A stretch of DNA of 64,000 nucleotides, from the NCBI GenBank assembly GCA_002269645.1, contig NIVC01003615.1, forward strand, positions 23,620 to 87,619, in the 5' to 3' direction. The stretch's first letter is position 1. Each line of letters begins with the position of its first letter. This document shows, piece after piece, positions 2 through 60,838 of this stretch. The notes under the pieces are model-generated. The model was not told the origin of the DNA and searched no databases. It was given only the letters and a program-made list of their open reading frames with translations. This DNA comes from Macrostomum lignano. Taxonomy: Eukaryota. Both the position numbers and the translations under genes were made by a program.

Positions 2-3000
2 ATTTCTAACCGAGAGACAAGAGATCTCTGCTGCCAGCAGATCGCACCGTATGCCGCACGCAATGAGCAGTGGGATTTAGTGAGATTTCTAGTCCAGGAA
101 GCTGCCAATCCAACTGTGAAGGATCAGCTAAGAGCTGCTGGATCGGAATCGGCTTCAAAATTCGCCCAGTGGGATGTAGCGGAATCTCTGCTACGAGAAA
201 TCGCCAACCAGGATATTCGAGACGAATGTTGCAGCAAGGTGTTGAAAACCGCTGCAGCCAAGCATCAGTGGGATTTAGTGAGACTTGTTGCACAGTTAAT
301 TCAATGCGAACGGAAGCGAGACAGAAGCTGCGTGGAAACAGCAAAATCTGCTGCAAAAGACGGTCAGCAGGAACTCGTTCGATTTCTGGTGCAACAAATC
401 GGAGACCAGAGTTTGAAGGACAGGTGCTGCATGGAGGCATCGGAAGCTGCTTCAAATGCGAGACGTTGGCCATTGGTGAGACTTCTTGTTGAACTCTTCT
501 TTGACAGTGGCATGAGAGATCGGATCTGTGTGCATGCCGCTAAGGCCGCTTTGAGATTTGGCCAGTTGGAGGAACTGAAGTTTTTCGTTGAGACAGTTGC
601 TGATCGAAGTTTAAAGGATCAATTCTGCATCGAGGCGGCGAAATCTGCTGCCAAAGAGCGCCTTTGGCGAGCGGTCGAATTTTTGGTGATGACAGTGGTC
701 GATGAGCGTTCAAGAGACCAGTGCTGCAAGGATGCCGTGAAATCAGCTGCGAGTGAGTGCAAATGGGAACTTGTGGGGTCGCTCGTGAGTGCTATTTCCG
801 ATCCGAATATAAGCGATCAGTGCTGCATAGAGGCAGCCAAGTGTTCCGCAAGTGTTGGAAAACAGGAGATCGTTGAATTCCTATTTCACGCTCTAAAAAA
901 TCCCGATTCGCAAATCGCCTTCCGCCGAGAATGCGCCGTGGCGGCTTGCTGTCGTTTGCGCGAAGAATTTGTGGCTTTTCTCGGCGTTGAGCCCGACTGG
1001 CTCTTCGAATTTAGCCATGTCCTCAGCTTCACAGCTTCGATGGCCATCGAGGGCCGAAATTCCGTTCTGAAGTCGACTCTGTCGAAGATGAATCCCGATC
1101 GAATCACCCAGCTGCTCTGTCTCTCAATCTCACACTGCCATGTCTCACTGGCTCTAACGCTTATGGACGACGAGAGATTCAGCAAAGAGCATGTTGATGT
1201 GCCCGACAGCTCAGGAGCAACTGCGCTCATGCTAGCGGCTGATTCTGGTCACCACGAGCTCATAGATAAGCTGTTGGATCTGGGAGCGTCAGTGAGAGCT
1301 CAAGATCATCAGGGTAGAACGGCATTGACGCGAGCCTGCGAGGCGGGTCACATTAGAACTGCAAAGCTTCTGAAAGACAGGGGAGCGAATGCGGACCATC
1401 GAGACGGCCAAGGCCTGACGTGTACGCAGCTGGCAGAGAGGCTTGGACACTCGCAGCTGCTGCGGCTGCTGTGTCCCGAGAAAGTGAGGTCAGTTCATGC
1501 ACAAATATTTTCTAAGTTCGTTGCGCTCAACAAAAGTTTTATCATTCAAACTTAGGATTGACAGAAAATTTGCAAACCTTTCAGCAGCCCGCCCATCAAG
1601 AAGCCGGTCGCTCTTTCCAGAAAACCTTCAAGTTCTTTGCCTTCGTAAGTTTTTTCCGCAAGCAGCTTTTCCATGTCTTTTACTTGCCGTCGGCATAGAT
1701 GTCTACGAGCGTAGAACTTCAATAGCCACAATGGCTATAAGTGTATAGATTTAAATGATTGCCTAATATATAAAAAAGAACTTTTTCCCCATTCCAGATT
1801 CAAAGACGATGTTCAGCAGGACGAGCAGCTCAGCGAAGAGCTGCATCAACTGCTCAGCAAAGCTGGCTTCACATCTGAGAGAGCGGAGTGCCAGCAGAGA
1901 ATGGCCTGCCTGCTGGAAGGAGTCGCCAAAACTCTGACTGAATATTCCCGAAAGATGACTGGCAGCTATGCGGAGGGTTGGGCTAACAGTCTGATGCAAG
2001 TCAACGGCAGGACAGCGGCTGACTCGGACATTGACTGGACTGTGCTTGTTCGCGGACAAACGTTTCATCTTGAAGACGGATGCGGAAAATTTCGCGAATG
2101 CAATAATGTCGAAAAACTGAAGGTTGCAGAGGGTCACGCACAGGTGACAGTAGGATCTGGTAAGAGGAACAGGGTAATGTGTAACTTTTTAGTTTTCTTG
2201 TCAAAAAGTATTGCTCCGGCCCACTTGATTCGCAGTTGAACTTTCGCATTAGTCGCAAGTTTACCCTATCTTATTCAATCCATAGGCAGCCAGCCTGCTG
2301 TGACAGTTGGTGCATCCGGGGTGCGGCCTGCACTGGACACGTGCCACGCCATTGAGTGCTGCAGCTCGTTCTGCGAGGACAGAATTGAAAAATTAATTAA
2401 AAACTACGGCTGGGTTCACCTCGTCAGGGCTACTCGACCGAGCTCAACCAACGAGCTCAGGGTAAGTTTCAGCTTCCAAGAGAGGGAGATCATGCGACAA
2501 CTGAACACAATTCAGGGACAGCTGTTCACAATTATCAAGTTCATCTTCAAAAGGCACCTGCCGCTTAATCTCAGCACGCCCGGGCTCAAGAGCTATCACG
2601 CGAAAACGCTGCTATTTTTCATGCTGGAAAAGCACGGCATGGAGAATGGAGAAGCTTGGAAACCTCAGAAACTAATCTCGCTGATCAAGGAGTCACTCAG
2701 CATGCTCCTGAGCTTCATCGATAAGAGCAATTCAGCCGATGTGTGCATGCCGCATTTCTTCATGCCCGGCGCTCCGCTCTACTTCAAAAATGCTGGAATC
2801 GGTGGCGACTTTGACAACACGAAGGCGAGAATTCGAAGCCGACTCAGCGAACTTAGGGGCGACATTAGCGGAGTGCTTAAGCAGCTTAAGGTGCTAGTGA
2901 GACCTCTGGAATCGGAGAATTTCTACTTTCACCCCTTCACGCTGTTGCCTCTGACGGCTTCGCCGGCCGAACTCGAGATAAGAAGCGGAATGGCCTTGCA

Positions 3001-3685
3001 GGAGCAGCATTCAAGGCTTGCGCGAGTGTACCAGGTGCTTCACCAGTGCTTGGACGAGCTGCAGTCGGAATCGAGCGACAGGGACACTCTGACTGGGCAA
3101 CTCGGTCAGCTGGACCAGCTTCCGTCTTGCAAATACGCCGCCATGTGCCTGGCCGCCATTGTCAGCTTGCGGTTTGGAGAGACAGCCGAGTCGGAGAGAA
3201 TCTTGATGGAGCTTCAAAAGCGAAGAGTCAAAAGTGGACTTAGCCCGAGAGAGGTTCAAACGTTGGACACAGACTGGGCTTGGCGGTTCTGCCTCCCGTG
3301 TCACAATCCGCCCCACTTCCCGTTCCTGCCCGGCTTCACGCAGTCTCTGTTCACAGCCAGACTGTCGCAGCCGAGCTCCTCTCACCTGTACGTGAACTTC
3401 CGCTGCCTGAGCTGGAGCCTCCAAGCCGAGCTGCTCCATGATCGCAGCCCAATAGTGTTCGGTGAGTGGCTGGAAGATCTGCAAGAAGACCCGGACTTGG
3501 AGGAGCTGCTCACCCTAGCCCACTACAGCGACTGCCGTGAGCATGTGATGTTCTGCCTAGAGCAAATGGAGATTATCAGAGACGAGAGACGCGTCGCCAT
3601 GGATACCCAGGACCACGAAAAGATTCGCTGCGTGACTGAGAAGCTTCAACGGCTAAGCAAGTCTCCGCAGGCACGGCGCTCTTAA
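2..3685 (+). CDS. Ankyrin/helical-repeat cGAS-like receptor (Mab-21/cGLR nucleotidyltransferase), 5'-truncated, at least 1107 aa
   Basis: Model join(<2..1483,1565..1644,1798..2159,2286..3685); all introns GT-AG with matching phases 0,2,1 (alternative first intron 1488^1585 is also in frame). The frame is open from base 2. Order of domains: nine 33-aa repeats, then canonical ankyrins (GATALMLAADSGH, GRTALTRACEAGH, GLTCTQLAERLGH), then NTase motifs TGSYAEG (GS at 1961-1966), DSDID (2021-2035) and LDTCHAI (D at 2336-2338), then Mab-21 motifs LRVSFSFQE, LKSYHAKTLLF and CMPHFF. Confidence 0.88.
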
Positions 3686-8182: not shown

Positions 8183-11100
8183 ATGCGGCTGTACACACTT
8201 AGCAAGCGCAGCTTTGTATTGGTCTTCCTAGTCTTCTTTGCCTGCTTTGGCCTGGCAGTGTTTGTTGGCCTGCTGGGACCACCAATCATCCAGCAGTCGG
8301 TGCAGAATGCCAGCAGCTTGAAGCCAGCGCCAACTCCATCAGTCATGCGGCGGGGTCCATTCAATCTGCTGAGCCCGCCGCTTAACCTGCTGCACCAGCA
8401 GCTCTGGCTGGTGGCCAAGTTCTTTGTTGATGAGTCGCAGTGTGAGTTGGTCGCAGTCTGATAATTATTGATTCAATAATTTTATAGCGTGTAACATAAC
8501 AGCAGGTGTGGGGGTAACTGACTCGGCAATAAAACTCGCACACACAGACGACCGAAAGCTGGAGTACGGCCTGACCGTCAGCGTCAACTTGACAAGAGGC
8601 CGCGGCGCCAGGTGCGGCAGCTTCTTCAGCGGGCCGCACAGCCGGATGAGGCGGCTGCGGTGCGACCGCAGGGTGAGGAGTGGATGCTGGGCTATGTGCT
8701 GTACTTTATGCTGTAGGTGTGCTGTAGTTTATGCTGTAGGTGTGCTGTAGTTTATGCTGTAGTTGTGCTGTAGGTGTGCTGTAGTTTATGCTGTAGGTGT
8801 GCTGTAGTTTATGCTGTAGGTATGCTGTAGTTTATGCTGTAGGTGTGCTGTAGTTTTATGCTGTAGGTGTGCTGTATTTATGCTGTAGGTGTGCTGTAGT
8901 TTATGCTGTAGGTGTGCTGTAGTTTATGCTGTAGTTTATGCTGTAGTTGTGCTGTAGGTGTGCTGTAGTTTATGCTGTAGTTGTGCTGTAGGTGTGCTGT
9001 AGTTTATGCTGTAGGTGTGCTGTAGTTTTATGCTGTAGGTGTGCTGTAGTTTATGCTGTAATTTATACTGTAGTTGTGCTGTAGTTGTGCTGTATTTATG
9101 CTGTAGGTGTGCTGTAGTTTATGCTGTAGGTGTGCTGTAGTTTATGCTGTAGGTGTGCTGTAGTTTATGCTGTAGTTTATGCTGTAGTTTATGCTGTAGT
9201 TGTGCTGTAGGTGTGCTGTAGTTTATGCTGTAGTTTATGCTGTAAGTTTAGTTGTGCTGTAGGTGTGCTGTAGTTTATGCTGTAGGTGTGCTGTAGTTTA
9301 TGCTGTAGGTGTGCTGTAGTTTATGCTGTAGGTGTGCTGTAGTTTATGCTGTAATTTATACTGTAGTTGTGCTGTAGTTGTGCTGTTTTTATGCTGTAGG
9401 TGTGCTGTAGTTTATGCTGTAGGTGTGCTGTAGTTTATGCTGTAGTTTATGCTGTAGTTGTGCTGTAGTTGTGCTGTAGGTGTGCTGTAGTTTATGCTGT
9501 AGTTGTGCTGTAGGTGTGCTGTAGTTTATGCTGTAGGTGTGCTGTAGTTTTATGCTGTAGGTGTGCTGTAGTTTATGCTGTAATTTATACTGTAGTTGTG
9601 CTGTAGTTGTGCTGTATTTATGCTGTAGGTGTGCTGTAGTTTATGCTGTAGGTGTGCTGTAGTTGTGCTGTAGTTTTATGCTGTAGGTGTGCTGTAGTTT
9701 ATGCTGTAGTTTATGCTGTAGTTTATGCTGTAGTTGTGCTGTAGTTGTGCTGTAGGTGTGCTGTAGTTTGTGCTGTAGTTTATGCTGTAGTTGTGCTGTA
9801 GGTGTGCTGTAGTTTATGCTGTAGGTGTGCTGTAGTTTTATGCTGTAGGTGTGCTGTAGTTTATGCTGTAATTTATACTGTAGTTGTGCTGTAGTTGTGC
9901 TGTATTTATGCTGTAGGTGTGCTGTAGTTTTATGCTGTAGGTGTGCTGTAGGTGTGCTGTACTGTATGCTGTAGGTGTGCTGTAGTTTATGCTGTAGTTT
10001 ATGCTGTAGGTGTGCTGTAGGTGTGCTGTAGTTTATGCTGTAGTTTATGCTGTAGGTGTGCTGTAGGTGTGCTGTAGTTTATGCTGTAGGTATGCTGTAG
10101 TTTATGCTGTAGTTGTGCTGTAGGTGTGCTGTAGTTGTGCTGTAGGTGTGCTGTAGTTTATGCTGTAGGTGTGCTGTAGTTTATGCTGTAGGTGTGCTGT
10201 AGTTTATGCTGTAGGTGTGCTGTAGTTTTATGCTGTAGGTGTGCTGTAGTTTATGCTGTAATTTATACTGTAGTTGTGCTGTAGTTGTGCTGTATTTATG
10301 CTGTAGGTGTACTGTAGTTTATGCTGTAGGTGTGCTGTAGTTTATGCTGTAGTTTATGCTGTAGGTGTGCTGTAGGTGTGCTGTAGTTTATGCTGTAGGT
10401 ATGCTGTAGGTGTGCTGTAGTTTATGCTGTAGGTGTGCTGTAGTTTATGCTGTAGGTGTGCTGTAGTTTATGCTGTAGGTGTGCTGTAGTTTATGCTGTA
10501 GGTGTGCTGTAGTTTTATGCTGTAGTTGTGCTGTAGTTTTATGCTGTAGGTGTGCTGTAGTTTATGCTGTAGGTGTGCTGTAGTTTTTTTTGCTGTAGGT
10601 GTGCTGTAGTTTATGCTGTAGTTTATGCTGTAGGTGTGCTGTATAAAACTAAGTGATAGGCCTAGGACTGCAGCAATATTTCCCATATCTCTCGCGCAGG
10701 CCTGCTCCCAGATGACCCTGTTCCACCTGAGCTACATCAACTGCAGCCGATACTCGGTGCAGGTGGGCTTCTCAGGCCTGGAGAATGTGTCCGGCGAGAT
10801 GCTGTCGGTGCGCGATGTGCAGTTCGGCTTCGTCACCTACAGTCCGGCCTTCACGCAGGAGGAGATCTGGCTGAGATTCCTCCTCCTGCTCGCCTCCTTC
10901 GTGGCCGTGGTGAGTTCAGTCTCCCCTCTGTTCTCTCATCCACCATCTGTCCTCTCACCCCTCCGTCTCTTCTCTCACCCCACCATCTCTTCTCTCACCC
11001 CACCATCTGTTCTCTCACCCCACCATCTCTTCTCTCCCCCTCCATCTGTTCTCTCGCCCACCATCTGTTCTCTCATCCACCATCTGTCCTCTCACCCCTC

Positions 11101-14100
11101 CGTCTCTTCTCTCACCCCACCATCTCTTCTCTCACCCTCCATCTGTTCTCTCACCCCATCTGGTCTGTCACCCCATCTGTTCTCTCGCCCACCATCTGTT
11201 CTCTCACCCCACCATCTGTTCTCTCCCCCTCCGTCTCTTCTCTCACCCCACCATCTCTTCTCTCACCCCACCATCTCTTCTCTCACCCCATCTGTTCTCT
11301 CACCCCATCTGTTCTCTCGCCCACCATCTGTTCTCTCACCCCACCATCTCTTCTCCCCCCCTCCATCTGTTCTCTCACCCCATCTGTTCTCTCACTCTCC
11401 ATCTCTTCTCTCACCCACCATCTCTTCTCTCACCCCACCATCTGATCTCTCACCCCACCATCTCTTCTCTCACCCCAACATCTGATCTCTCACCCCACCA
11501 TCTCTTCTCTCACCCCACCATCTCTTCTCTCACCCTCCATCTGTTCTCTCACCCCATCTGGTCTGTCACCCCATCTGTTCTCTCGCCCACCATCTGTTCT
11601 CTCACCCCACCATCTGTTCTCTCCCCCTCCGTCTCTTCTCTCACCCCACCATCTCTTCTCTCACCCCACCATCTCTTCTCTCACCCCATCTGTTCTCTCA
11701 CCCCATCTGTTCTCTCGCCCACCATCTGTTCTCTCACCCCACCATCTGTTCTCTCCCCCTCCATCTGTTCTCTCACCCCATCTGTTCTCTCACTCTCCAT
11801 CTCTTCTCTCACCCACCATCTCTTCTCTCACCCCACCATCTGATCTCTCACCCCACCATCTCTTCTCTCACCCCAACATCTGATCTCTCACCCCACCATC
11901 TCTTCTCTCACCCCAACATCTCTTCTCTCACCCCACCATCTCTTCTCTCACCCCACCATCTGTTCTCTCACCCACCATCTCTTCTCTCACCCAACCATCT
12001 GTTCTCTCACCCACCATCTCTTCTCTCACCCAACCATCTCTTCTCTCACCCCCACCATCTGTTCTCTCGCCCCACCATCTGTTCTCTCACCCCACCATCT
12101 GTTCTCTCCCCCTCCGTCTCTTCTCTCACCCCACCATCTCTTCTCTCACCCCACCATCTCTTCTCTCACCCCATCTGTTCTCTCACCCCATCTGTTCTCT
12201 CGCCCACCATCTGTTCTCTCACCCCACCATCTGTTCTCTCCCCCTCCATCTGTTCTCTCACCCCATCTGTTCTCTCACTCTCCATCTCTTCTCTCACCCA
12301 CCATCTCTTCTCTCACCCCACCATCTGATCTCTCACCCCACCATCTCTTCTCTCACCCCAACATCTGATCTCTCACCCCACCATCTCTTCTCTCACCCCA
12401 ACATCTCTTCTCTCACCCCACCATCTCTTCTCTCACCCCACCATCTGTTCTCTCACCCACCATCTCTTCTCTCACCCAACCATCTGTTCTCTCACCCACC
12501 ATCTCTTCTCTCACCCAACCATCTCTTCTCTCACCCCCACCATCTGTTCTCTCGCCCCACCATCTGTTCTCTCACCCCACCATCTGTTCTCTCCCCCTCC
12601 GTCTCTTCTCTCACCCCACCATCTCTTCTCTCACCCCACCATCTCTTCTCTCACCCCATCTGTTCTCTCACCCCATCTGTTCTCTCGCCCACCATCTGTT
12701 CTCTCACCCCACCATCTGTTCTCTCCCCCTCCATCTGTTCTCTCACCCCATCTGTTCTCTCACTCTCCATCTCTTCTCTCACCCACCATCTCTTCTCTCA
12801 CCCCACCATCTGATCTCTCACCCCACCATCTCTTCTCTCACCCCAACATCTGATCTCTCACCCCACCATCTCTTCTCTCACCCCAACATCTCTTCTCTCA
12901 CCCCACCATCTCTTCTCTCACCCCACCATCTGTTCTCTCACCCACCATCTCTTCTCTCACCCAACCATCTGTTCTCTCACCCACCATCTCTTCTCTCACC
13001 CAACCATCTCTTCTCTCACCCCCACCATCTGTTCTCTCGCCCCACCATCTGTTCTCTCACCCCACCATCTCTTCTCTCACCTCTCCATCTCTTCTCTCAT
13101 CCTTCCATCTCTTCTCTCACCCACCATCTCTTCTCTCACCCCTTTCTTCCACCTCCCCTCTATCTCATCTTTCATCCCACCAAGCAAAAGCTCCCGCCCC
13201 CGCACCGCCACCAGTGCCTGTTCATGCACTCGCTGAGGAGATTTCTGTTGCGCGACTGGAGCATCGAGCAGCGCTGGATGGCCCTCCTGCTGCCCCTGCT
13301 GCTGCTGTACAACGGTAAGCCGCCTTTATTTTTTAAAGTCTCAATTGCCTATTATAAGTAGCCTAGGCTGAATTGCTTGCGGTATTGCAGATCCGCTGCT
13401 GCCGCTAACGTTTTTGGTGAATCACTGGCTGCCGAGCATGCTGGACACCGTGTTCCAGGCCACCTTCCTGTGCGCCCTGCTCATGTTCTGGCTGTGCATC
13501 TATCACAGCGTGCGCGAGGTGAGGGCGCTTGTGATCGGCTGTTTGTGGGGTCATGCTCTATATGTACACTTAGCAGGATCATTTTCAAGTATGTATGCTA
13601 GCTGGGTGATGTTCAAAGTATGTACACTAGCTGAGTCATGTTCAAGTATGTATGTACTACCAGGATCATGTTCAAGTATGTACATGTGCTAGCAGGATCA
13701 TGTTCAATTATGTACATGTGTTAGCAGAATCATGTTAAATCATGTAAATGTGTTAGCATGATCATGTTCAATAATGTACATGTGTTAGCAGGATCATGTT
13801 CAATTATGTACTAGCAGGATCATGTTTAAGTATGTAAATGTGTTAGCAGGATCATGTTCAATTATGTACTAGCAGGATCATGTTTAAGTATGTAAATGTG
13901 TTAGCAGGATCATGTTCAAGTATGTACATGTGCTAGCAGGATCATGTTTAAGTATGTAAATGTGTTAGCAGGATCATGTTCAAGTATGTACATGTGCTAG
14001 CAGGATCATGTTCAAGTATTGTAGGATTTGTAGGTACATCTGCAAGCAAAATCATACTCAGGCAGACATAACTAGCATATTAGCGGAATCCTCTTTAAGC

Positions 14101-16157
14101 ATGCACTATTAGTACCGTGTTCGATTGCTCCAACTTACCTACGAGTACTTAAGTAGCATAATTGCGATGTTTAGAACGAGCGGCACTTCTGCCGGTTTTA
14201 CCTGCCCAAGCTGGTTATTGTGGCCGCGATGTGGCTCTTTGCTCTGGTCATCTCGGGCTGGCAGACCGCTCACGAACTGCGGGATCCGACCTATTTTTAT
14301 CGACTGGACACCGGCAATTTTATGGTGAGAACCGGGCAGGCATGGGTCTAGCAATCCTCGGATTTTGACGCTTCCATTTTGTCACCCTAAATTCGCAGGC
14401 GCTTAAAGTGACTTTTCTGACCATTTGCGGACTTTACGTGCTTTACCTGGTCTACTTGGTGGTTCGGGCGTTTGCCGAGCTGAGATCTATGCCCTACTTT
14501 GGTGAGCTTTCAACCTGCAGATTTTATTTTCGATACATATCGGCTCCGAGGTTATTTTTGTATTTTCTGTGCATATCGGCTTCTAGCCTACTTTGTATTT
14601 TCTATACATATCGGCTCCGAGGCTATTTTTTAATTTTCTATACATATCCGCTCCGAGGCTATTTTGTATTTTCGATACATATCGGCTCCGAGGACATTTT
14701 GTATTTTCGATACATATCGGCTCCGAGGCTATTTTTATTTTCTATGCATATCGGTTCCAAGGCTATTTTGTATTTTCTATACATATCGGCTGCCGTAATT
14801 TTATTTAAATCCTTTTGATGCATATCGGTTGAGATGCTACTGTTTTTGATACATATCACTTTCTCCTTCCTTCGAACGCTCAGATCTTCGCCTGAAGTTT
14901 AGCACCTTCCTGATGCTGATAGTCATCGGGGTGACCATTGCCATTGCCGCCATGCGCTGGGGCTCCGGCGTGTTGGATGACAGCTTCGTCGCCGAGGTGT
15001 CCGCCCGCTACGACAATTCGGCTGAGTTCGTGTCATTCTACTGCCTGCTCAATTTCTACCTGTTCGCCATGGCCTTCGTGTACAGCCCGAGTAGGAACGC
15101 TGCTCACGGTGAGGCATATGGCTGGCTACTTAAAATCAGAATTTTTTAATACTACTGATCAGTGTCAGTAGTCAGTAGTATCATTGGCACATTCACCGAA
15201 TTTCTTTACAGAAACTCAATTCAAAGACGATCCCGGGGTCAGCATGGTCACTGATAGCGATGAGGATGCGGTGTACGAGTGAGTCGCTTTTAATTCTGGC
15301 AATTTCTGCAGCCTCTTTGACCTGCTCTGTCATGCACAGCTTTTTTGGAAAATCTGTTTGAAACTGTACTATCGCTTCCAATAAAATATGAGCATTCTCT
15401 TGCTCCCTGTCTTATTCAGTGTCTCACTCACTGCCTTCACCCACTGCTTCACTCACTCACTGCCTCACTCACTGCCTCACTCACTGCCTCACTCACTGCC
15501 TCACTCACTGTCTCACTCACTGCCTCACCCACTGCTTCACTCACTGCCTCACTCCCTGCCTCACCCACTGCTTCACTCACTCACTGCCTCACTCACTGCC
15601 TCACTCACTGCCTCACCCACTACCTCACCCACTGCTTCACTCACTCACTGCCTCACTCACTGCCTCACCCACTGCCTCACCCACTGCCTCACTCGCGCAC
15701 CCCACAGTCTAAGCGTGGGCATCCTGCGCCCCAACCGGCAGAGGCGGTCCGCCTCAGCGCTGCTCATGTGGGTATCGCAGCTGCGGAGCTGCATTTACAA
15801 GAATAAAATCAATTTTCTATTAGCCTCACTTAATGTTCTCAACACTTTTCCACAGTGATTTGGTTTTCGGATAATCTTAAAAAAGTTGCGAAAGAAAACT
15901 TAAATTTGCACCCCTGATTCTTGTGTTGTGATTGCTAATGACCTTTGTCTACTATCATTATTAGCTAAACAGCCGTCGCTCTGAAAGGAGCTTTGACTCC
16001 TCCTGATTGCGTTCCTGATAAATTAGTTATTAATTCACTTTGATTTTCATTTTCGCTCACTCTGTTCGTCACTTCATCAACCTGCAGGTCTGACGTCACC
16101 GAGAATTCCTTCATGCTGAAGCCGGGAGGCAGAGCGGCTGGCCTGGGCGCGCGCTAA
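8183..16157 (+). CDS. TMEM181: Transmembrane protein 181 (GPR178/Wntless-like family)
   Basis: Exons 8183-8441, 8548-8672, 10700-10909, 13215-13314, 13391-13518, 14175-14324, 14399-14501, 14884-15108, 15212-15278, possibly 15708-15767, and 16088-16157; GT-AG with consistent phases. Peptides MRLYTLSKRSFVLVF, RDWSIEQRWMALLLPLLLLYNDP, FYLPKL and YSPS match remembered TMEM181 sequence. Confidence 0.93.
8695..10640. repeat. Intronic minisatellite, 11-12-bp units (GCTGTAGTTTAT / GCTGTAGGTGT)
   Basis: Read directly; fills TMEM181 intron 2. Confidence 0.97.
10920..13140. repeat. Intronic CT-rich ~20-bp minisatellite (CCATCTCTTCTCTCACCCCA) with a ~485-bp higher-order period
   Basis: Read directly; an identical variant block recurs at 12001, 12486 and 12971. 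Confidence 0.95.
13560..14030. repeat. Intronic ~32-bp minisatellite (GTTCAAGTATGTACATGTGCTAGCAGGATCAT)
   Basis: About 14 degenerate copies in TMEM181 intron 5. Confidence 0.9.
14520..14795. repeat. Intronic ~35-bp minisatellite (ATACATATCGGCTCCGAGGCTATTTTGTATTTTCT)
   Basis: About 8 degenerate copies. Confidence 0.9.
15420..15695. repeat. Intronic 12-bp minisatellite (CACTGCCTCACT)
   Basis: Read directly. Confidence 0.93.
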
Positions 16158-16179
16158 GGCGGGCAATGGATCTCCGGGT

Positions 16180-16742
16180 CTCTCAGTCACTGTCTCTAAG
16201 TCCCTCATCCACTGTCCCCAAGTCCCTCATCCACTGTCCCCAAGTCCCTCACCCACTGTCCCCAAGTTCCTCACCCACTGTCCCCAAGTCCCTCACCCAC
16301 TGTCCCCAAGTCCCTCACCCACTGTCCCCAAGTTCCTCACCCACTGTCTCCAAGTCCTTTACCCACTGTCCCCAAGTCCCTCACCCACTGTCTCCAAGTC
16401 CCTCACCCACTGTCCCTAAGTCCCTCACCCACTGTCCCCAAGTCCCTAACCCAGTGTCCCCAAGTCCCTCACCCACTGTCCCCAAGTCCCTCACCCACTG
16501 TCCCCAAGTCCCTCACCTATTGTCCCCAAGTCCCTTACCCACTGTCCTTAAGTCCCTAACCCAGTGTCTCCAAGTCCCTTACCCACTGTCCTTAAGTCCC
16601 TCACCCACTGTCCTTAAGTCCCTCACCCACTGTCCTTAAGTCCCTCACCCACTGTCCCCAAGTCCCTCACCCACTGTCTCCAAATTCCTCATTCTGTCCC
16701 CAAGTCCCCACCCACTGTCCTTAAGTCCCTCACCCTGTCCCC
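16180..16742. repeat. 22-bp minisatellite (CCCAAGTCCCTCACCCACTGTC) just after the TMEM181 stop
   Basis: About 25 copies. Confidence 0.93.
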
Positions 16743-16992
16743 AATCAACCTACATAAAAAGTCAATAACAACAGTTTTTAATTTAATTTTCATATTTTAT
16801 GCATGCACAATATCGTTGTGCCCAAAACTGAGTATTTAAAAGGAAAAGTAAATTTTTTGAGTCACAGTCATTTGTGTCGTTTTTGACTTCCCAAGTTGCC
16901 CTTGTCAGTTTAAGCTTGTTGTCCATTTCCATGCGCAAATATTTGTATTAATAAGTGCTTCCCATTTTTATCTCGTTGGTCTCGGCTTCTCT

Positions 16993-17004
16993 GGTCACGT
17001 GACC
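16993..17004. promoter_or_regulatory. Palindromic E-box/CLEAR-like site GGTCACGTGACC
   Basis: Perfect 12-bp palindrome containing GTCACGTGAC, upstream of the probable 5' region of the next + strand gene; function unproven. Confidence 0.35.
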
Positions 17005-17369
17005 TGGTGATGGAGATATTTTTTCTAATCCGGGCTCCGAGTTCTGTTGTCTACGCCAGCTCTGCCCAAGCCTTGTGTGATGCCGTTTGTTTGTACAGAC
17101 TTCCCAAACATTTTTTCATTTTTTTGCCGTGTTCTTGAGGAGCCGGCTCTTCCCGTGCTCTGACAATATTTTTTTCTGCACGCGGTTTGTTGCTTCCAAA
17201 CTTTACTTATAAGCAGTTTATTAAAGTGCACCTTTTGGTTGGTTTTTGACAATTTTTGTTTATTTTTATTCTGTGCAACCCGTTCACTGGGGCTTCCTGC
17301 ATTCAGAGCTGTGTACGTCTGACCGCTGCTTTTGAGCTGCCTGCATCCGCCTCTGACTGCTCTTGTGAT

Positions 17370-18000
17370 CTGGCGTCTCCCTCTCACTCTCCCCCTCTCC
17401 CTCTCACTCTCCCCCTCTCCCTCTCCCTCTCACTCTCCCCTCTCCCTCTCACTCTCCCCTCTCACTCTCACTCTCATCCTCTCCCTCCCCCTCTCACTCT
17501 CCCCCCTCCCTCTCACTCTCCCCCTCCCTCTCACTCTCCCCTCTCCCTCTCTCTCTCACTCTCCCCCTCTCCCCTCACTCTCTCTCTCTTCCTCTCCCTC
17601 CCCCTCTCACTCTCCCCCCCTCCCTCTCACTCTCCCCTCTCCCTCTCACTCTCCCCCTCTCCCTCTCCCTCTCACTCTCCCCCTCTCCCTCTCACTCTCC
17701 CCCTCTCACTCTCTCTCATCCTCTCCCTCCCCCTCTCACTCTCCCCCCCTCCCTCTCACTCTCCCCCTCCCTCTCACTCTCCCCCTCTCCCTCTCTCTCT
17801 CACTCTCCCCCTCTCCCCTCACTCTCTCTCTCTTCCTCTCCCTCCCCCTCTCACTCTCCCCCCTCCCTCTCACTCTCCCCCTCTCCCTCTCACTCTCCCC
17901 CCTCCCTCTCACTCTCCCCCTCCCTCTCCCTCTCACTCTCCCCTCCCTCTCCCTCTCCCTTTCCATCTTCCTCTCTCCCTCTCCCTCTCTCCCTCAATCT
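17370..18000. repeat. CT-rich low-complexity tandem repeat (CTCTCACTCTCCCC-type)
   Basis: Read directly. Confidence 0.93.
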
Positions 18001-18829
18001 CCTTCTCTAGAGAGCTCACGTATTTATTTCTCTCCGACTCTCCCTTCCTCAGTTTCTGCTCCCCTTCTCGTTTACTTCCCATTACCAATGACTGTTCGTG
18101 TCTCCATTCCTTCATCGCTGCAGCAGCCCAGATTAAACGGAATACTGACATGCCGCAGATCCGGCCATAAAATCTTCCAATGACCGTTTTTTCGCACTAT
18201 CCTTATTCGGTAAAGTTTTGTGATCCCTTCTGTCCCCCACCCCGCCTCTATGCACTGCTGACGCTGAACTTCTGGCTTGAGCACCTGCTCAAATATAATG
18301 AAATTCGGCCCAGGCTGTGGTGTAACAACAGCAGATCTGTTAAAATGTTCTTTTTTTGAAATGAGCAAAACTAACCCTTTGAATTTGTATTTACAAACGC
18401 ATTCCTATTGTTTTAACTGTGTTTTAATCAGAATTTAAGCAAGATCCCAGACTAAGCCGCTGCCGTGATGAGGGCTTCAGGCGCTTCAAGGACCCTGAGC
18501 TCGCGCACACGCTCAAATCTGATTAAATATCGCTCGATTTCTACAAAGTCAAGGAAGCGAAACTTTAAAGTTCACGTCAAGTTAAATTTCTACCACTTTA
18601 ACTTGTCTTACTTTTAGAGCTATTAGATTTGAGAACTTGAAAAGGCGTCTCAAAGGAACAAGATGAGCGCGAAAGTGCAACAGCAAGGAAGCAAGTATAG
18701 TTGAACATGGCAAACAATTGTCTGAAAGTTCACCACATTGACGGTATAAATGTAGCCTCTCTATCCAGCCCTCGGGGTCCTTTGCAACTTTACAATAGCA
18801 ATCCGATCCGCTCAAGGTTTGTCTCTTCT

Positions 18830-19190
18830 CAGCTCTCCTCTCTCTAATCGCGTCTTCTCTTTTCTCTTCTCTCTCCTCTCCTCTCCTCTCCTCTCCTCCC
18901 CTCTCCTTTCTCGCACTTATTTTTTCTCCTTTTTCCTCTCCTCTCCCCTCTCTCCTTTCCTCTCATCTCCTCTCCTTTCCTCTCATCTCCTCTCCTCTCC
19001 TCTCCTTTCCTCTCCTCTCCTCTCCTCTCCTCTTCTTTCCTCTCCTCTCCTCTCCTTTCCTCTCCTCTCCTCTCCTTTCCTCTCCTCTCCTTTCCTCTCC
19101 TTTCCTCTCCTTTCCTCTCCTTTCCTCTCCTCTCCTTTCCTCTCCTTTCCTCTCCTCTCCTCTCCTCTTCTCTCCTCTCTTTTCTCTCTT
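18830..19190. repeat. (CTCCT/TTCCT)n pentanucleotide microsatellite
   Basis: Read directly. Confidence 0.93.
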
Positions 19191-19794
19191 TTCTATTTGA
19201 TTTCCCTCTCCCCTCCTCAGGCCCGCAGTCATGCTTTAGGTTCTCTATCTGGTCCTGGAGGCAAAAAGTTTGCTCACCCCTGATGTAGATAGTCACTCCT
19301 GTGGAATAATAACAATATTTTTCTCTTCATTTGCTACAATCTTTAGTGTATCTTCTTGGATGGTCTTGGATCGGTTTAAGGGCAAGAAATGCTTTGGTTT
19401 CTCCTTGCAAAACTACGTTCTTTAGTTCCTTTATTTGCCTAGTTACTTAGCGTATCAGTTTTTTAATTGATTAAATATCAAAGACAGTCAAAGAATCGTG
19501 GACCATTTGCTAGACTGTTGCAGTTTAGCTAGTTGGGCCAAATTAAATGCTGCTGTTGCCTACCTTGCTACCATAGACAAAAGCTGCATTATTTTAATAA
19601 ACATATTTTCGATTAAATTCCATTCGTGTAAGCACAATTATTAAGAAATATTTCTAAAAATAGAAATCCCTTTTGAGTACGTAAAAAGGACTTCTATTGA
19701 ACCATTCGATCACAGAAATTCTATTCGATTAAAACAATTGATTAGGTACCATCATCGTTCGTTCCAAAACTATAGTCATTTTTTTTTTCAAAAG

Positions 19795-22628
19795 ACATTC
19801 GACTGCCAGAATTTGCTGTGCGTCATGAACGATGACCAGCCAATGCGGGAGCCCCGAAGTATGCTGCGCGTCTGCTTGTGGGAGGAAGAGCTGCGGGAGC
19901 TCGGGGTCAGTGAGCAGTGCTCCAAACTGCTCGACTTCACCTGCAGGAGCCTCGTTGTGACGCCGTTCCACTTCTCTGAGTCCACCGTCAAGGTAGGGAT
20001 GAGGTAGGGATGGAGTAGGGATGGGGTAGGGATGGAGTATAGGGATGTGGTATAGGGATGGGGTATAGGGATGGGGTAGGGATGGGGTATAGGGATGGGG
20101 TAGGGATGGAGTATAGGGATGTGGTATAGGGATGGGGTATAGGGATGGGGTAGGGATGGGGTATAGGGATGGGGTATAGGGATGGGGTAGGGATGGGGTA
20201 AGGATGGGTTAGGGATTGAGTAGGGATGGGTTGGGGTAGGGATGGGTTGGGGTAGGGATGGGCCCTGCGGGTTGCGGGTTCCACCATGGGGTTGACTGCT
20301 TGCCTTTGTATGCTTTTAGAAGCCACGAGGCTTCGAAGGCAGCAGTGAGCGATTCCGTGAGCACGGTCGCTAGGTAGTGATGGAGACTGGTATGCTAGTG
20401 CTCCAGTGGGTGTGGTAGCTAAGTGACACTGGTAGCTAAGTGCTTCCCCTGAGCGTCCAGCTTTCCTGGATAAGGATGGTCCCCCTTAGGGTGTTCAGGA
20501 CAATGTGCTGCAGGTTAGCCTTGCAAGATAGTCATGTTTGCTGTCTAGGGATCAGCTTCAGCTTCAGCTTCATTGAGCTGAATGAAGAGCAGCTCATTCT
20601 CAGCGTCATCGGTGAGGGTTGAGCTGTCTTCGTCCATTGGCTCAGGCTCAGCCGCTTTCCCAGCCGCAGAGGCGGACGCTGCGTCTGTGGCAGGTGGTGC
20701 ACCTGACCGCTCTGCGCCGCCTTCCTCCTCGGCGACTGGTGTACGGCTGCTGGCCTCGCCTTGCGCCTCGCCGTCGGGAATCTGGACTCTGTCGGCAGCA
20801 GTCTCCTTGGTAGCAGCCCCACCTGTTGAACGATCGAGCTATATCTTCTTCCAGTTCCTTTGGCTGGTGGCATGCCAGCAGGAATACACCCTCATTGAGT
20901 GTCCGAGGATACGGTGGTTCCTGACGGCCCAGCCGCGTCACCAGACTTATCCCATCGCCTCATCATCTCATTTCCTCATCATCTCATTTCCTCATCATCT
21001 CATCGCCTCATCATCTCATCGCCTCATCATCTCATCGCCTCATCATCTCATCGCCTCATCATCTCATTTCCTCATCATCTCATTTCCTCATCATCTCATT
21101 TCCTCATCATCTCATTTCCTCATCATCTCATTTCCTCATCATCTCATTTCCTCATCATCTCATTACCTCATTATCTCATCGCCTCGCTGCATTTCCAACT
21201 GCCATTTTTTAATCTTCCCAGACACCGGCGGCTCTGGTGCTTCTGATGCTGGCTCTGTCCGTGACCTTCTATCGCAGATTTGTCGGTGACCCCAATGTTG
21301 AAAACGACCATCCAGATGGAGCTAGTGAGAGACTCAGAGTTGCTCAAAGTTTTGCTTAAAATTAGTTTTTTTTATCTGGTTCTTCCTGTACGCTCGTATA
21401 GTCTATGAATCGCATACAGTAAACAGCAAACCTGTAGCCTGTAGATACAGAAAACAGCAAATCTGTAGCCTGTAGATACAAAAATCAGCAAACCTGTAGC
21501 CTGTAGATACAGAAAACAGCAAAACCTGTAGCCTGTAGATACAGAAAACAGCAAATCCGTAGCCTGTAGATACAGAAAACAGCAAAACCTGTAGCCTTTA
21601 GAAAACAGCAAAACCTTGTTGCTAGGGAAGTTCCTGGTGCTGCACAAGGCCAGCCGGGAGTGCCTGGACAAGCAGGCAGTGGAGACGGTCTGCCGCACCC
21701 TGGAGGAGATGGTCAGCGACTCCATGAAGGGCCTGTCCAGCAGGGAGATCTGGGCCTACGAGGTTGTGCATCTGCAGAAGCTGCGCGAACTCGGATACAA
21801 GTGAGCCAATCTCCATCTGGATTATGAAGCTGCCTGATGCTGACTCTTGCATACCGTCCTCACCCTCCGTCACCCTCTCACCCTCCGTCACCCTCTCACC
21901 CTCCGTCACCCTCTCACCCTCCGTCACCCTCTCACCCTCCGTCACCCTCTCACCCTCCGTCACCCTCTCACCCTCCGTCACCCTCTCACCCTCCGTCACC
22001 CTCTCACCCTCCGTCACCCTCCGTCACCCTCTCACCCTCCGTCACCCTCTCACCCTCCGTCACCCTCTCACCCTCCGTCACCCTCTCACCCTCCGTCACC
22101 CTCTCACCCTCCGTCACCCTCTCACCCTCCGTCACCCTCTCACCCTTCGTCACCCTCTCACCCTTCGTCACCCTCTCACCCTCCGTCACCCTCTCACCCT
22201 CCGTCACCCTCTCACCCTTCGTCACCCTCTCAACCTTCGTCACCCTCTCACCCTCCGTCACCCTCTCACCCTCCGTCACCCTCTCACCCTCCGTCACCCT
22301 CTCACCCTTCGTCACCCTCTCACCCTCCGTCACTCTCTCATTCTCTGTCACCCTCCGTTACCTCCGTCGCCCCCGCAGGCTGCTGGAGTTCCTGGACGAT
22401 TTGAAACGCGACACGCGCGACTCGCACAACCTGGCGCCCACGCAGGTGCTGACGGACGTCGCCATGACGCTGGTGCTGGAACGCGAGGTCCGCTGCCTCA
22501 CCAACCGTGACAAGGAAGTGCCGGTGCACGCCTTCTCGGCATTCAGCCAGAGCGTCGCCGACCAGGTTGACAACAAAGCTATCGAGGGCATGCACGACCT
22601 GCTTGAGCACACCAGGATGGCCGCCTGA
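19795..22628 (+). CDS. Uncharacterised multi-exon protein; 3' four exons, 5' end unresolved
   Basis: Exons 19795-19992, 21222-21285, 21626-21800 and 22379-22628 join in frame (phases 0,1,2) with GT-AG and GC3-rich codons. Peptide TFDCQNLLCVMNDD...TPAALVLLMLALSVTFYRRFVGKFLVLHKASRECLDK...HDLLEHTRMAA*. No family recognised. Confidence 0.75.
19993..20260. repeat. 12-14-bp repeat (GTAGGGATGGG) beginning exactly at the splice donor
   Basis: AAG|GTAGGGATG... repeated about 20 times. Confidence 0.9.
20270..20940 (-). mobile_element. Internally deleted R1/LOA-like non-LTR retrotransposon relic (ORF1 tail plus start of ORF2)
   Basis: The minus strand shows an acidic ORF1-like tail ending ...EAEAEADP*. 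ATG at 20535 then gives MTILQ/ANLQH...ILIQESW (AP-endonuclease N-terminus, one frameshift), then LTAAFEAS and TPWWNP (about 20277-20290), motifs typical of R1/LOA ORF2. Confidence 0.65.
20950..21190. repeat. 16-bp minisatellite (TCATCTCATTTCCTCA)
   Basis: Read directly. Confidence 0.92.
21415..21612. repeat. ~32-bp minisatellite (ACAGAAAACAGCAAAACCTGTAGCCTGTAGAT)
   Basis: About 6 copies directly upstream of the 21626 acceptor. Confidence 0.9.
21855..22365. repeat. 18-bp minisatellite (CCCTCCGTCACCCTCTCA)
   Basis: Read directly; merges into the 22379 acceptor. Confidence 0.95.
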
Positions 22629-22709
22629 GCAGCCCAAGCCGCCAAAACATGAGTCAAACATTGACTGACAGTCTGATGGAGAGAATGAGGCTGGAGTGCT
22701 CATCGAATT

Positions 22710-23400
22710 AGACCCTCTACAGATGCTTACAGACCCTCTACAGATGCTTACAGACCCTCTACAGATGCTTACAGACCCTCTACAGATGCTTACAGACCCT
22801 CTACAGATGCTTACAGACCCTCTACAGATGCTTACAGACCCTCTACAGATGCTTACAGACCCTCTACAGATGCTTACAGACCCTCTACAGATGCTTACAG
22901 ACCCTCTACAGATGCTTACAGACCCTCTACAGATGCTTACAGACCCTCTACAGATGCTTACAGACCCTCTACAGATGCTTACAGACCCTCTACAGATGCT
23001 TACAGACCCTCTACAGATGCTTACATACCCTCTACAGATGCTTACAGACCCTCTACAGATGCTTACATACCCTCTACAGATGCTTACAGACCCTCTACAG
23101 ATGCTTACAGACCCTCTACAGATGCTTACAGACCCTCTACAGATGCTTACAGACCCTCTACAGATGCTTACAGACCCTCTACAGATGCTTACAGACCCTC
23201 TACAGATGCTTACAGACCCTCTACAGATGCTTACAGACCCTCTACAGATGCTTACAGACCCTCTACAGATGCTTACAGACCCTCTACAGATGCTTACAGA
23301 CCCTCTACAGATGCTTACAGACCCTCTACAGATGCTTACAGACCCTCCCTCTACAGATGCTTACAGACCCTCTAGAGATGTTCTACAGACCTCTACAGAT
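22710..23400. repeat. Near-perfect 21-bp minisatellite (GACCCTCTACAGATGCTTACA)
   Basis: About 30 nearly identical copies between two convergent genes. Confidence 0.97.
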
Positions 23401-23696
23401 ACTTTTTACAGATATTTTATAGGTGCTCTACAGAAAATCTACAGATAGTCTACAGGACTTCTAACTTCCGATAGCCGCAAATCCTCAATAAATTATCAGT
23501 CACCCTGAGCGTGGCTATTTTGAATATCCTCCCAAATTTCCAGATGTAGTGTTTCAATAATAAAATCACAAAGTTTGATTAAACATTTGCAAAACAACAT
23601 TCTAACTGGCTTGTTATAATAGTTCTAAATCATTTTCAATCTGCCTACTCGAAAGCAGTAAAAATTTATATTAGTTGCCGACAAATTCTGCCGCAG

Positions 23697-30377
<6,681 letters not shown>

Positions 30378-33883: not shown

Positions 33884-35134
<1,251 letters not shown>

Positions 35135-39165: not shown

Positions 39166-39615
39166 CTTTGTATTAAGCATGAAAATCAGATTCTAGTGTG
39201 CGACCATTTCGAGTTTGAAATGACTCAAACAAAAAATAATGCAATAACAAACTAAAATCATGTTTTACTTGAACAAACGAGCGAAATAGCACTAAGCCTT
39301 TAATTATTAATCATTTCTTATATTTCCATTTTAGACAGTACAGAACAGTCGGTTTAAGATTACAAAGACGGCAAATAAGAAAGTAAACACAAGTACTTGC
39401 TTTATCGCTGGATAGCCACATAGTTTCATTAGCGTTTTAAAGCCTAAAGGGGCAAACTAGATTACTAGTAGTAGTATTTTTTATCAGACGTTAGCGGGCG
39501 CTGAGACGCAGGAAAACCTTCTAGTTGGGCTGAATAAGTAAATTGGGATAAACTAAAGCATAGCATAGAACAATATTGATGCTTCAAACAAGAGTTCCGC
39601 CGGGCTCCGTCCCGG

Positions 39616-60831: not shown

Positions 60832-60838
60832 GCGTGCG

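What the first reader, a model, noticed from the sequence alone, without database searches (positions are those of the whole stretch)
2..3685. Ankyrin-repeat cGAS-like receptor with an apparently intact catalytic triad: candidate innate-immune sensor
Seen in sequence: four exons splice in phase into one protein of at least 1107 aa. It has a long repeat array, then a nucleotidyltransferase with GS (TGSYAEG), DxD (DSDID) and a third Asp (LDTCHAI), then Mab-21 lobe motifs (RVSFSFQE, KSYHAKT, PHFF). The ORF track splits it into three unrelated-looking ORFs, so the fusion is easy to miss. Established: cGAS/cGLR enzymes use this G[S]-x-[DE]h[DE]-...-[DE] triad to make cyclic dinucleotides that activate STING. 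Inference: the repeat array is a ligand-sensing or autoinhibitory module, making this a sensor-enzyme fusion that may respond to a protein or other non-DNA ligand. Ankyrin-cGLR fusions may already be annotated in invertebrate surveys; I cannot check whether this lineage or its ligand is described.
Basis: partly seen in the sequence, partly recalled or inferred. Interest (0 to 1): 0.85.

Follow-up and report, generated by a model that had tools for sequence, protein, structure and literature searches.

The report
Flatworm ankyrin-repeat cGAS-like receptor gene
The region encodes most of a Macrostomum lignano (flatworm) protein that joins a long ankyrin-repeat array to a cGAS-like nucleotidyltransferase with intact catalytic residues; the reading is correct, but close paralogues were already catalogued as ankyrin-cGLRs in 2023, so this is one more member of a known family.

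Summary
Window 2-3685 (+) splices in phase through three GT..AG introns into 1107 codons plus a stop. The window is Macrostomum lignano DNA. A UniProt model of this locus (97% identical) uses the same last two junctions. The first junction differs in the database models, but all variants stay in frame. A paralogue locus has the same four-exon layout.

The N-terminal 494 aa fold as about 15 ankyrin-type repeats. Most are a divergent, Cys-rich 33-aa repeat, followed by three canonical repeats. The nucleotidyltransferase fits the published cGLR motif: MTGS-X20-DIDW-X56-LDT. Pfam Mab-21_C scores above its threshold, and the 17 best structural matches of the model are all cGAS or cGLR structures. 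A family-specific 240-aa helical extension follows.

It is not new. Li et al. 2023 cloned five M. lignano cGLRs, including paralogues about 70% identical in this domain, and list one of them with Ank domains. None is marked active in their screen table.

My additions are family-level. At least 100 representative clusters were found, and every named one I checked is M. lignano. The triad is kept in 61 of 72 domain copies. It is lost in all five caspase- or kinase-fused models. The N-terminal array is the fastest-diverging part. Ligand, product and receptor remain unknown, and I did not test for STING in this species. New member of a known kind; interest about 0.3.

The parts
2..991 (+). Exon 1, first part (cut by the window start): ten copies of a divergent Cys-rich 33-aa ankyrin-type repeat (aa 1-330), roughly (R/K)D-x-CC-x-x-AAKSAA-x4-W-x-LV-x-FLV.
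   Evidence: The period is exactly 33 aa, with repeat starts at aa 7, 40, 73 ... 271. Pfam Ank_2 scores 33.2 bits (threshold 27.3) and Ank 30.4 bits (threshold 21.1). The AF2 model has pLDDT 91.6, with one helix pair per repeat. The Foldseek top hits are all ankyrin or DARPin structures, E about 1e-10. Median identity to close paralogues is only 38%.
992..1192 (+). Exon 1, middle part: transitional helical repeats linking the two arrays (aa 331-397), well conserved in the family (EPDWLF..., AIEGRNSVL...).
   Evidence: Helices 331-388 continue the solenoid in the model. Invariant columns E330, P331, L334, F335, N353 and S354. Median identity to paralogues is 66%.
1193..1483 (+). Exon 1, last part: three canonical ankyrin repeats (aa 398-494).
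   Evidence: Pfam Ank_2 E 1.8e-21, Ank E 6.9e-18, Ank_4 and Ank_5. Median identity to paralogues is 70%.
1484..1564 (+). The database models instead use a donor after 1488, with an acceptor before 1588 (P0001) or before 1798 (P0002).
   Evidence: All three variants are in frame. Which one is used needs RNA data.
1565..1644 (+). Exon 2: a Pro/Ser/Lys-rich linker mini-exon. Its 3' part, SPPIKKPVALSRKPSSSLPS, is in P0001. P0002 skips the exon.
   Evidence: The paralogue P0012 has a mini-exon at the same place.
1645..1797 (+). Intron 2 (GTAAGT...CCAG, 153 nt).
   Evidence: The junction peptide SSLPSFKDDVQ is present in P0001.
1798..2159 (+). Exon 3: the N-terminal spine helices and the first part of the nucleotidyltransferase core. 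GS lies at 1961-1966 and D-I-D at 2027-2035. A conserved His/Cys cluster follows.
   Evidence: Motif MTGS-X20-DIDW. G55 and S56 are invariant, D77 is kept in 67 of 72 copies and D79 in 65 of 72. In the model, strand 50-54 is followed by GS and a helical turn, and D77/D79 sit at the start of strand 79-91. A weak local hhalign alignment pairs TGSY with cGAS TGSY and D77/D79 with E225/D227.
2160..2285 (+). Intron 3 (GTAAGA...ATAG, 126 nt, phase 1).
   Evidence: The junction peptide VTVGSGSQPAVTVG is in P0001. The paralogue locus L001 has an intron at the same codon, about 17 kb long there.
2286..2959 (+). Exon 4, first part: the rest of the nucleotidyltransferase core, with the third catalytic Asp (LDT; Asp codon 2336-2338), and the Mab-21 C-terminal helical lobe (Pfam match at nt 2558-2776).
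   Evidence: D138 is kept in 62 of 72 copies. Pfam PF20266 scores 28.4 bits against a threshold of 24.1. Profile against the PDB: cGLR1 8gjy E 1.8e-8, cGAS E 6e-7, MAB21L1 E 7e-4. hhalign to human cGAS gives probability 88-98% over the C-lobe. Foldseek finds cGAS, MB21D2 and Cv-cGLR1.
2960..3685 (+). Exon 4, last part: a family-specific C-terminal extension of 241 aa, mostly helical with a small sheet, plus the stop codon at 3683-3685.
   Evidence: No Pfam family matches it. It is modelled together with the nucleotidyltransferase at pTM 0.85, pLDDT mostly 80-95. Only weak TPR-like Foldseek matches appear (BepA, IFIT; E above 0.005). Full-length matches that include this part were found only in M. 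lignano proteins. Conserved motifs include DWAWRFC, HLYVNFRCLSWSL and DPDLEELLT.

Best explanation
Window 2-3685 carries the last four exons, about 92% of the coding sequence, of a Macrostomum lignano ankyrin-repeat cGAS-like receptor (cGLR). It is one paralogue of a large family seen only in this species among the proteins I could name.

Shown here:
- An N-terminal solenoid of about 15 ankyrin-type repeats encoded in the window, with about 3 more upstream.
- A short flexible linker.
- A nucleotidyltransferase core carrying G-S, D-x-D and a third Asp.
- The Mab-21 helical lobe.
- A 240-aa helical extension that is modelled together with the enzyme at high overall confidence.

Inferred:
- The enzyme is inactive until a ligand is bound, through the fast-evolving ankyrin array and/or the C-terminal extension.
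- It then uses two NTPs to make a cyclic dinucleotide or a related nucleotide signal, which switches on a downstream immune or cell-death receptor.
- The ligand is more likely a protein or another non-nucleic-acid molecule than DNA. The cGAS zinc thumb is missing, the catalytic half is not strongly basic, and no M. lignano relative is marked active in a published screen that used pooled nucleic acids.

The receptor is unknown. I did not establish whether this species has STING.
For: Gene model: in phase, with canonical splice sites. Two of the three junctions are identical to UniProt model P0001. The paralogue locus has the same layout.

Species and family: all 54 word-index hits are M. lignano proteins, nearly all combining ANK and Mab-21_C. 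The exhaustive search found 217 representatives at E<=1e-3 and 100 at E<=1e-10. The eight named representatives I checked are all M. lignano.

ANK array: 33-aa period, Pfam above threshold, pLDDT 91.6, ankyrin and DARPin top hits.

cGLR criteria of Li et al.:
- The motif MTGS-X20-DIDW-X56-LDT is met.
- C-lobe homology is met.
- Fold homology is met: the 17 best PDB matches are all cGAS, MB21D2 or Cv-cGLR1, E 5e-6 to 4e-4, TM about 0.5 on the target.

Selection on the triad: 61 of 72 copies keep G-S/D-D/D. The losses tend to hit several catalytic positions at once and include all five effector-fused models: caspase fusions P0040, P0056, P0057 and P0192, and kinase fusion P0006.

Variable sensor idea: the N-terminal array is 38% identical to close paralogues, against 70-71% for the proximal ANK repeats and the enzyme.

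Non-DNA ligand idea: the cGAS Zn-thumb segment aligns to a gap. The pI is 8.1 for the enzyme domain and 6.3 with the extension, against 9.07 for the human cGAS construct.

Published precedent: Li et al. list ANK-cGLR as an architecture and cloned paralogues PAA68676.1 (my P0012) and PAA93208.1.
Against: - No activity data exist for this protein.
- The five M. lignano cGLRs in the Li et al. screen have an empty Note column, where active enzymes are named, so none was among the 15 active enzymes. Those constructs lacked the ANK array and were offered only nucleic-acid ligands.
- Sequence homology in the N-lobe is weak on its own: Pfam PF03281 gives no hit and the local hhalign E-value is 0.07.
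- Foldseek TM-scores are moderate, about 0.5, with large rmsd.
- The motif is at the edge of the published definition: the first spacer is exactly 20, and the residue after the third Asp is Thr, not a hydrophobic residue.
- I could not measure the geometry of the three carboxylates.
- A planarian survey found neither cGAS nor STING in Schmidtea (PMC13563047), so a STING partner in flatworms cannot be assumed.
- Expression of this particular copy is unverified.
Confidence: 0.75

Rival explanations
1. A non-catalytic Mab-21-type scaffold. The Mab-21 domain binds a nucleotide or a partner protein, as MiD51 and MAB21L1 do, and the ankyrin array recruits other proteins. No second messenger is made.
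For: No M. lignano family member is marked active in the published screen. Some paralogues have clearly lost the triad and are fused directly to a caspase or a kinase, so the fold can serve without catalysis in this family. MAB21L1, MiD51 and MiD49 appear among the sequence or structure matches.
Against: This copy and 85% of family copies keep all five catalytic positions. Where they are lost, several are usually lost together, which is the pattern expected if the triad is otherwise under selection. cGAS and cGLR structures outrank MiD51/49 and MAB21L1.
Confidence: 0.15
2. An active nucleotidyltransferase that makes something other than a STING-directed cyclic dinucleotide, for example linear 2'-5' oligonucleotides as OAS does, or a signal for a receptor unrelated to STING.
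For: The GS...DxD...D core is shared by OAS, cGAS and CD-NTases, and sequence alone does not fix the product. Li et al. report cGLR products that match no known standard. cGAS and STING were not found in a planarian.
Against: All of the best structural and profile matches are cGAS or cGLR rather than OAS. Most characterised cGLRs make cyclic dinucleotides.
Confidence: 0.2
3. Two separate genes, an ankyrin-repeat gene and a downstream Mab-21 gene, are joined only by the reader's splice model.
For: No transcript data were available to me.
Against: Every alternative for that junction still joins the two parts in frame. No stop or start signal lies between them in the spliced frame. More than 50 paralogue models carry both domains. 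The same exon layout is found at the P0012 locus. The enzyme exon 3 has no upstream Met-initiated ORF of its own that covers the spine helices.
Confidence: 0.04
4. A recently duplicated, unexpressed or decaying copy in a repeat-rich region.
For: The family is very large. The neighbourhood is full of tandem repeats and holds a broken retrotransposon. Database models of near-identical copies (P0001, P0002) show local frame-shifted or missing segments.
Against: All 1107 codons are open. Every family-invariant residue checked is intact.
Confidence: 0.1

Closest known systems
Macrostomum lignano cGLRs in Li et al. 2023 (PAA68676.1 = BOX15_Mlig016402g1, PAA93208.1 = BOX15_Mlig001946g3; Table S3 rows 92-93, Table S2)
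   Same: Same species and same subfamily. They are about 66-72% identical over the enzyme half, with the same GSYAEGWANSL...DSDIDW...RPAxDTCHAI motifs, the same C-terminal extension and N-terminal Ank domains.
   Different: This is a different paralogue. The best protein with an NCBI source is only 69% identical. Its N-terminal repeat array is about 38-40% identical and differs in length.
ANK-cGLR fusions of other animals (e.g. Stylophora pistillata; Li et al. 2023, Fig. 1C and 4C)
   Same: The same domain logic: a cGLR nucleotidyltransferase appended to ankyrin repeats.
   Different: Probably an independent fusion. The flatworm family has its own 33-aa Cys-rich repeat variant and its own 240-aa C-terminal extension, which I found only in M. 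lignano proteins.
Vertebrate cGAS (e.g. PDB 4k9b)
   Same: The same bilobal fold and catalytic motif, and the best structural matches. The C-lobe aligns with probability 88-98%.
   Different: About 14% identity. There is no zinc thumb and the domain is less basic. It carries extra ANK and C-terminal modules. It is not an orthologue.
Invertebrate cGLRs with solved structures (cGLR1 8gjy; Cv-cGLR1 8gjw) and human MB21D2 (7lt1)
   Same: The best profile hit is 8gjy at E 1.8e-8. 8gjw and 7lt1 are among the top Foldseek hits.
   Different: Those are single-domain enzymes. Identity is 12-14%.
MAB21L1 and MiD49/MiD51 (non-catalytic Mab-21 proteins)
   Same: A shared Mab-21 C-lobe.
   Different: According to Li et al. 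and to general knowledge, they lack a functional acidic triad. Here the triad is intact and conserved.

Membership tests
cGAS-like receptor (cGLR), criteria of Li et al. 2023 | Active-site motif h[QT]GS-X8-20-[DE]h[DE]h-X50-90-h[DE]h | tested here: met
   M-T-G-S, 20 residues, D-I-D-W, 56 residues, L-D-T (criteria read). Two edge points: the first spacer is at the upper limit, and the last position is Thr. The paralogue accepted by Li et al. reads Q-D-T at the same place.
cGAS-like receptor (cGLR), criteria of Li et al. 2023 | Sequence homology across both the NTase core and the C-terminal helix bundle | tested here: inconclusive
   The C-lobe is clearly homologous: PF20266 is above threshold, the profile hits cGLR1 and cGAS at E 1e-8 to 1e-6, and hhalign gives 88-98%. 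The N-lobe is not significant by sequence alone: PF03281 gives no hit and the local hhalign E-value is 0.07, although that alignment pairs the catalytic residues correctly.
cGAS-like receptor (cGLR), criteria of Li et al. 2023 | Predicted structural homology to known cGLR/CD-NTase enzymes | tested here: met
   The AF2 model has pLDDT 83.7 and pTM 0.85. The 17 Foldseek hits with E<=1e-3 are all cGAS, MB21D2 or Cv-cGLR1, most of them aligned over 350-415 columns covering both lobes, with TM about 0.5 on the target.
cGAS-like receptor (cGLR) | Ligand-dependent synthesis of a nucleotide second messenger | not testable with these tools
   This needs biochemistry. The published screen of five M. lignano relatives names none as active.
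cGAS-like receptor (cGLR) | A cognate receptor (STING or another) in the same genome | not tested
   No tool here searches the M. lignano proteome by family. A word-indexed search with a distant STING would not be informative. Schmidtea lacks cGAS and STING. No paper on M. lignano STING was found.
cGAS proper (DNA sensor) | Zinc-thumb insertion H-X5-CC-X6-C between the lobes, and a strongly basic DNA-binding surface | tested here: not met
   The cGAS thumb segment falls opposite a gap in the family profile. The pI is 8.1 (6.3 with the extension) against 9.07 for the human cGAS construct.
Ankyrin-repeat proteins | Tandem 33-residue helix-turn-helix repeats forming a solenoid | tested here: met
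   Exact 33-aa period. Pfam Ank families are above threshold in both the distal and the proximal arrays. The AF2 model has pLDDT 91.6 with 15 helix pairs. The Foldseek top hits are ankyrin-1, AnkB and DARPins, E about 1e-10. One departure from the canonical repeat: in the distal repeats the first helix is long (about 17 residues) and the hairpin loop is short.

The most novel reading that the evidence does not exclude
The M. lignano ANK-cGLR family may be a diversified intracellular receptor repertoire, with at least 100 clusters at 50% identity. It would be comparable in logic to expanded NLR families, in a phylum otherwise reported to lack cGLR-STING signalling.

In this reading, the hypervariable 33-aa Cys-rich ankyrin array recognises varied non-nucleic-acid (protein) ligands. 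The output is then either a nucleotide signal, in members with an intact triad such as this one, or a caspase or kinase fused in cis, in members that have lost the triad.
Probability: 0.25. Interest if true: 0.65.

Novelty: new member of a known kind. Interest (0 to 1): 0.3.

Why it matters
On its own the locus adds one more paralogue to a family that the 2023 cGLR survey had already recognised, cloned and tabulated with its ankyrin domains. It changes no concept.

Its value lies in context. M. lignano is a transgenic, RNAi-tractable laboratory flatworm, and the other flatworms surveyed lack cGLRs. Its cGLRs are numerous, fused to variable ankyrin arrays, and so far have no known ligand, product or receptor.

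The family-level patterns seen here give concrete, testable handles on how a repeat-based sensor could be coupled to a cGAS-type enzyme:
- the N-terminal array diverges fastest;
- the catalytic triad is lost in every caspase- or kinase-fused model I checked.

Tried and rejected
- Global hhalign of the family profile against a small cGAS alignment mis-registered the N-lobe, because cGAS has a much longer insert between the DxD strand and the third-Asp strand. I used only the local alignments, and the N-lobe one is not significant by itself.
- Pfam PF03281 (Mab-21 NTase core) gave no hit for this protein or for 12 relatives. N-lobe membership therefore rests on the motif, the model and Foldseek.
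- I could not measure the distances between the three catalytic carboxylates, because model coordinates are not exposed.
- I looked for paralogues inside the window and found none.
- I ran no further search on STING. A distant flatworm STING would share few exact words with any query I could supply and would be crowded out by closer hits, so a negative result would mean nothing. Four literature searches found nothing on STING in Macrostomum.
- I checked whether very long family models carry further effector domains. Only Ank domains appeared, plus one WSC domain that probably comes from a merged neighbouring gene. The weak BRX_N, PTP-NADK and DUF3734 matches in P0016 fall in or beside the ankyrin-repeat region and have no individually significant stretch, so I treat them as spurious.
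- I rejected the idea that the distal repeats are HEAT or TPR. The HEAT_2 and TPR_Slam hits are below threshold, and all top fold matches are ankyrin.
Full report
**What is in the sequence**

Window 2-3685 on the + strand contains three mechanical ORFs: 80-1555, 1901-2239 and 2300-3685. That is 1107 codons and a stop, with no internal stop. The three introns are 81, 153 and 126 nt, and each begins GT and ends AG after a pyrimidine-rich tract. No second copy lies elsewhere in the window.

**Whose gene it is, and whether the exons belong together**

A search with the enzyme half returned 54 proteins, all from the free-living flatworm Macrostomum lignano. Nearly all carry Ank domains together with Mab-21_C.

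The best hit is P0001 (UniProt A0A1I8HT57, 'Mab-21_C domain-containing protein', 97% identical).

The first junction differs. P0001 uses a GT donor five bases further on (1488^) and an acceptor at ^1588. P0002 uses the same donor and skips the mini-exon. All three variants are in frame and affect only a Pro/Ser/Lys-rich linker.

At the locus of a paralogue, P0012 (NCBI contig NIVC01001377.1), the layout is the same. It has an ankyrin exon, a mini-exon, an exon ending ...VGAG, and a last exon that starts at the same codon, after an intron of about 17 kb there. The fusion is therefore well supported. Only the exact first junction needs RNA data.

P0002 also shows that the window cuts off about 93 N-terminal residues.

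**The repeat array**

The N-terminal repeats start at aa 7, 40, 73 ... 271, an exact 33-residue period. Pfam Ank and Ank_2 reach their thresholds on this part alone. Three canonical repeats follow at aa 398-494 (E 1.8e-21).

An AlphaFold2 model of aa 1-494, built with 12 paralogues, has pLDDT 91.6 and shows 15 consecutive helix pairs. Its best PDB matches are all ankyrin-1, ankyrin-B or designed ankyrin proteins, with E about 1e-10.

The distal repeats are an unusual variant. They are Cys-rich, with a recurring (R/K)D-x-CC...AAKSAA...W-x-LV-x-FLV pattern. The first helix is long and the hairpin is short.

**The enzyme half**

Li et al. 2023 (PMC9980059) define cGLRs by three criteria:
- the motif h[QT]GS-X8-20-[DE]h[DE]h-X50-90-h[DE]h;
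- homology over both lobes;
- a predicted cGLR fold.

*Motif.* The window protein reads M-T-G-S, 20 residues, D-I-D-W, 56 residues, L-D-T.

*Homology.* Pfam Mab-21_C scores 28.4 bits against a threshold of 24.1. A profile of 13 family members hits cGLR1 (8gjy, E 1.8e-8), then many cGAS entries (E 6e-7 and weaker) and, near the bottom of the list, MAB21L1 (E 7e-4). hhalign to human cGAS aligns the C-lobe with probability 88-98%. The N-lobe is too divergent for a significant sequence match: PF03281 is silent and the local hhalign E-value is 0.07. That alignment nevertheless pairs TGSY with TGSY and D77/D79 with cGAS E225/D227. By eye, PAVT...LDT matches cGAS PAVT...VDI with a one-residue gap.

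*Fold.* The AlphaFold2 model of the 586-residue enzyme half has pLDDT 83.7 and pTM 0.85. It shows the expected order: a strand, then G-S and a helical turn, then D-x-D at the start of the next strand, then the third Asp at the start of a later strand. Its 17 PDB matches with E<=1e-3 are all cGAS, human MB21D2 or oyster Cv-cGLR1. MiD51 and MiD49 come lower. TM-scores are moderate, about 0.5. I could not measure the carboxylate geometry.

**What it is not**

It is not a cGAS orthologue. The zinc-thumb segment of cGAS falls opposite a gap. The enzyme domain has pI 8.1, or 6.3 with the extension, against 9.07 for the human cGAS construct.

**The C-terminal extension**

The last 241 residues match no Pfam family. 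They are modelled together with the enzyme at high overall confidence. They have only weak TPR-like fold matches. Matches that cover them were found only in M. lignano proteins.

**The family**

The exhaustive search found 217 cluster representatives at E<=1e-3 and 100 at E<=1e-10. The eight named representatives I looked up are all M. lignano. Two weaker ones, at E 1e-9 to 1e-7, are unnamed metagenome or assembly proteins that match only the C-lobe.

Among 72 full-length domain copies, 61 keep G-S, both Asp of D-x-D and the third Asp. The 11 exceptions mostly lose several positions at once.

All five models fused to an effector are among the exceptions:
- the caspase fusions P0040, P0056, P0057 and P0192;
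- the kinase fusion P0006.

This pattern suggests two things. The triad is maintained for function where no effector is attached, and the family acts in cell-death or immune signalling.

Against 23 close paralogues, median identity by region is as follows:

| Region | Median identity |
|---|---|
| Distal repeat array (also variable in length) | 38% |
| Proximal ankyrin repeats | 70% |
| Enzyme domain | 71% |
| C-terminal extension | 59% |

The distal array is thus the fast-evolving part. That fits a recognition surface, although relaxed constraint would look similar.

**What is already known**

Li et al. state that nematodes and most platyhelminths have no cGLRs beyond Mab21-like proteins. They also list ankyrin- and TPR-fused cGLRs as a recognised architecture.

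[quoted passage not shown] These include PAA68676.1 (my P0012) and PAA93208.1, which belong to the same subfamily as the window protein. Their Table S2 lists PAA68676.1 with Ank_2 domains.

The constructs began at or just before the enzyme half, so they lacked the ankyrin array, and the ligands offered were pooled nucleic acids.

A 2026 planarian study found neither cGAS nor STING in Schmidtea (PMC13563047). I found no paper on STING in Macrostomum.

**Verdict**

The gene is a new paralogue of an already catalogued family, so its novelty is low. Activity, ligand, product and receptor are open for the whole family. The idea that the ankyrin array senses a non-DNA ligand remains a reasonable but untested inference.

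Noticed in passing
window 8695-33130, 37625-39167 and 46696-49621: Dozens of tandem-repeat arrays with strongly strand-skewed composition. Periods run from 4 to 485 bp. The largest are a 46-bp unit x 70 copies at 24831-28036 and 20-bp units at 10927-13142 and 37625-39167. Together they fill much of the window.
   Followed up: partly
window 56717-62212, minus strand: Remnant of a BEL/Pao-type LTR retrotransposon. It has a gag-like ORF (DUF1759), Pao peptidase A17 with a weak reverse-transcriptase match, and an integrase (rve, DUF5641). The reading frame is split over five ORFs, so the element is probably broken. I did not look for LTRs.
   Followed up: partly
window 34055-35134 (+) and 36003-36896 (+): An actin ORF (Pfam Actin, E 5e-131) and a cytosolic sulfotransferase ORF (Sulfotransfer_1, E 7e-56) lie between the repeat arrays. 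They are unrelated to the finding.
   Followed up: no
family proteins P0040, P0056, P0057, P0192 and P0006 (other M. lignano loci): Paralogues whose gene models add a C-terminal caspase domain or a protein-kinase domain have all lost the catalytic acidic residues of the Mab-21 domain (GSDNS, GSDNT, GSDGS). Of 72 copies, 61 keep them. Either these are effector-fused pseudo-enzymes or the gene models are merged. The correlation argues for the former.
   Followed up: partly
window 2066-2068, 2081-2083, 2099-2101, 2135-2137 and 2357-2362 (enzyme-half residues H90, C95, C101, H113, C145, C146): A conserved His/Cys cluster lies in the insert between the D-x-D strand and the third-Asp strand. The residues are kept in 53 to 68 of 72 family copies. 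It could be a family-specific metal site. It is not at the position of the cGAS zinc thumb.
   Followed up: no
locus L001 (NIVC01001377.1), 11581-28684: The paralogue P0012 has an intron of about 17 kb at the codon where the window gene has a 126-nt intron. A Ty3/gypsy-like pol gene lies upstream of that paralogue.
   Followed up: no
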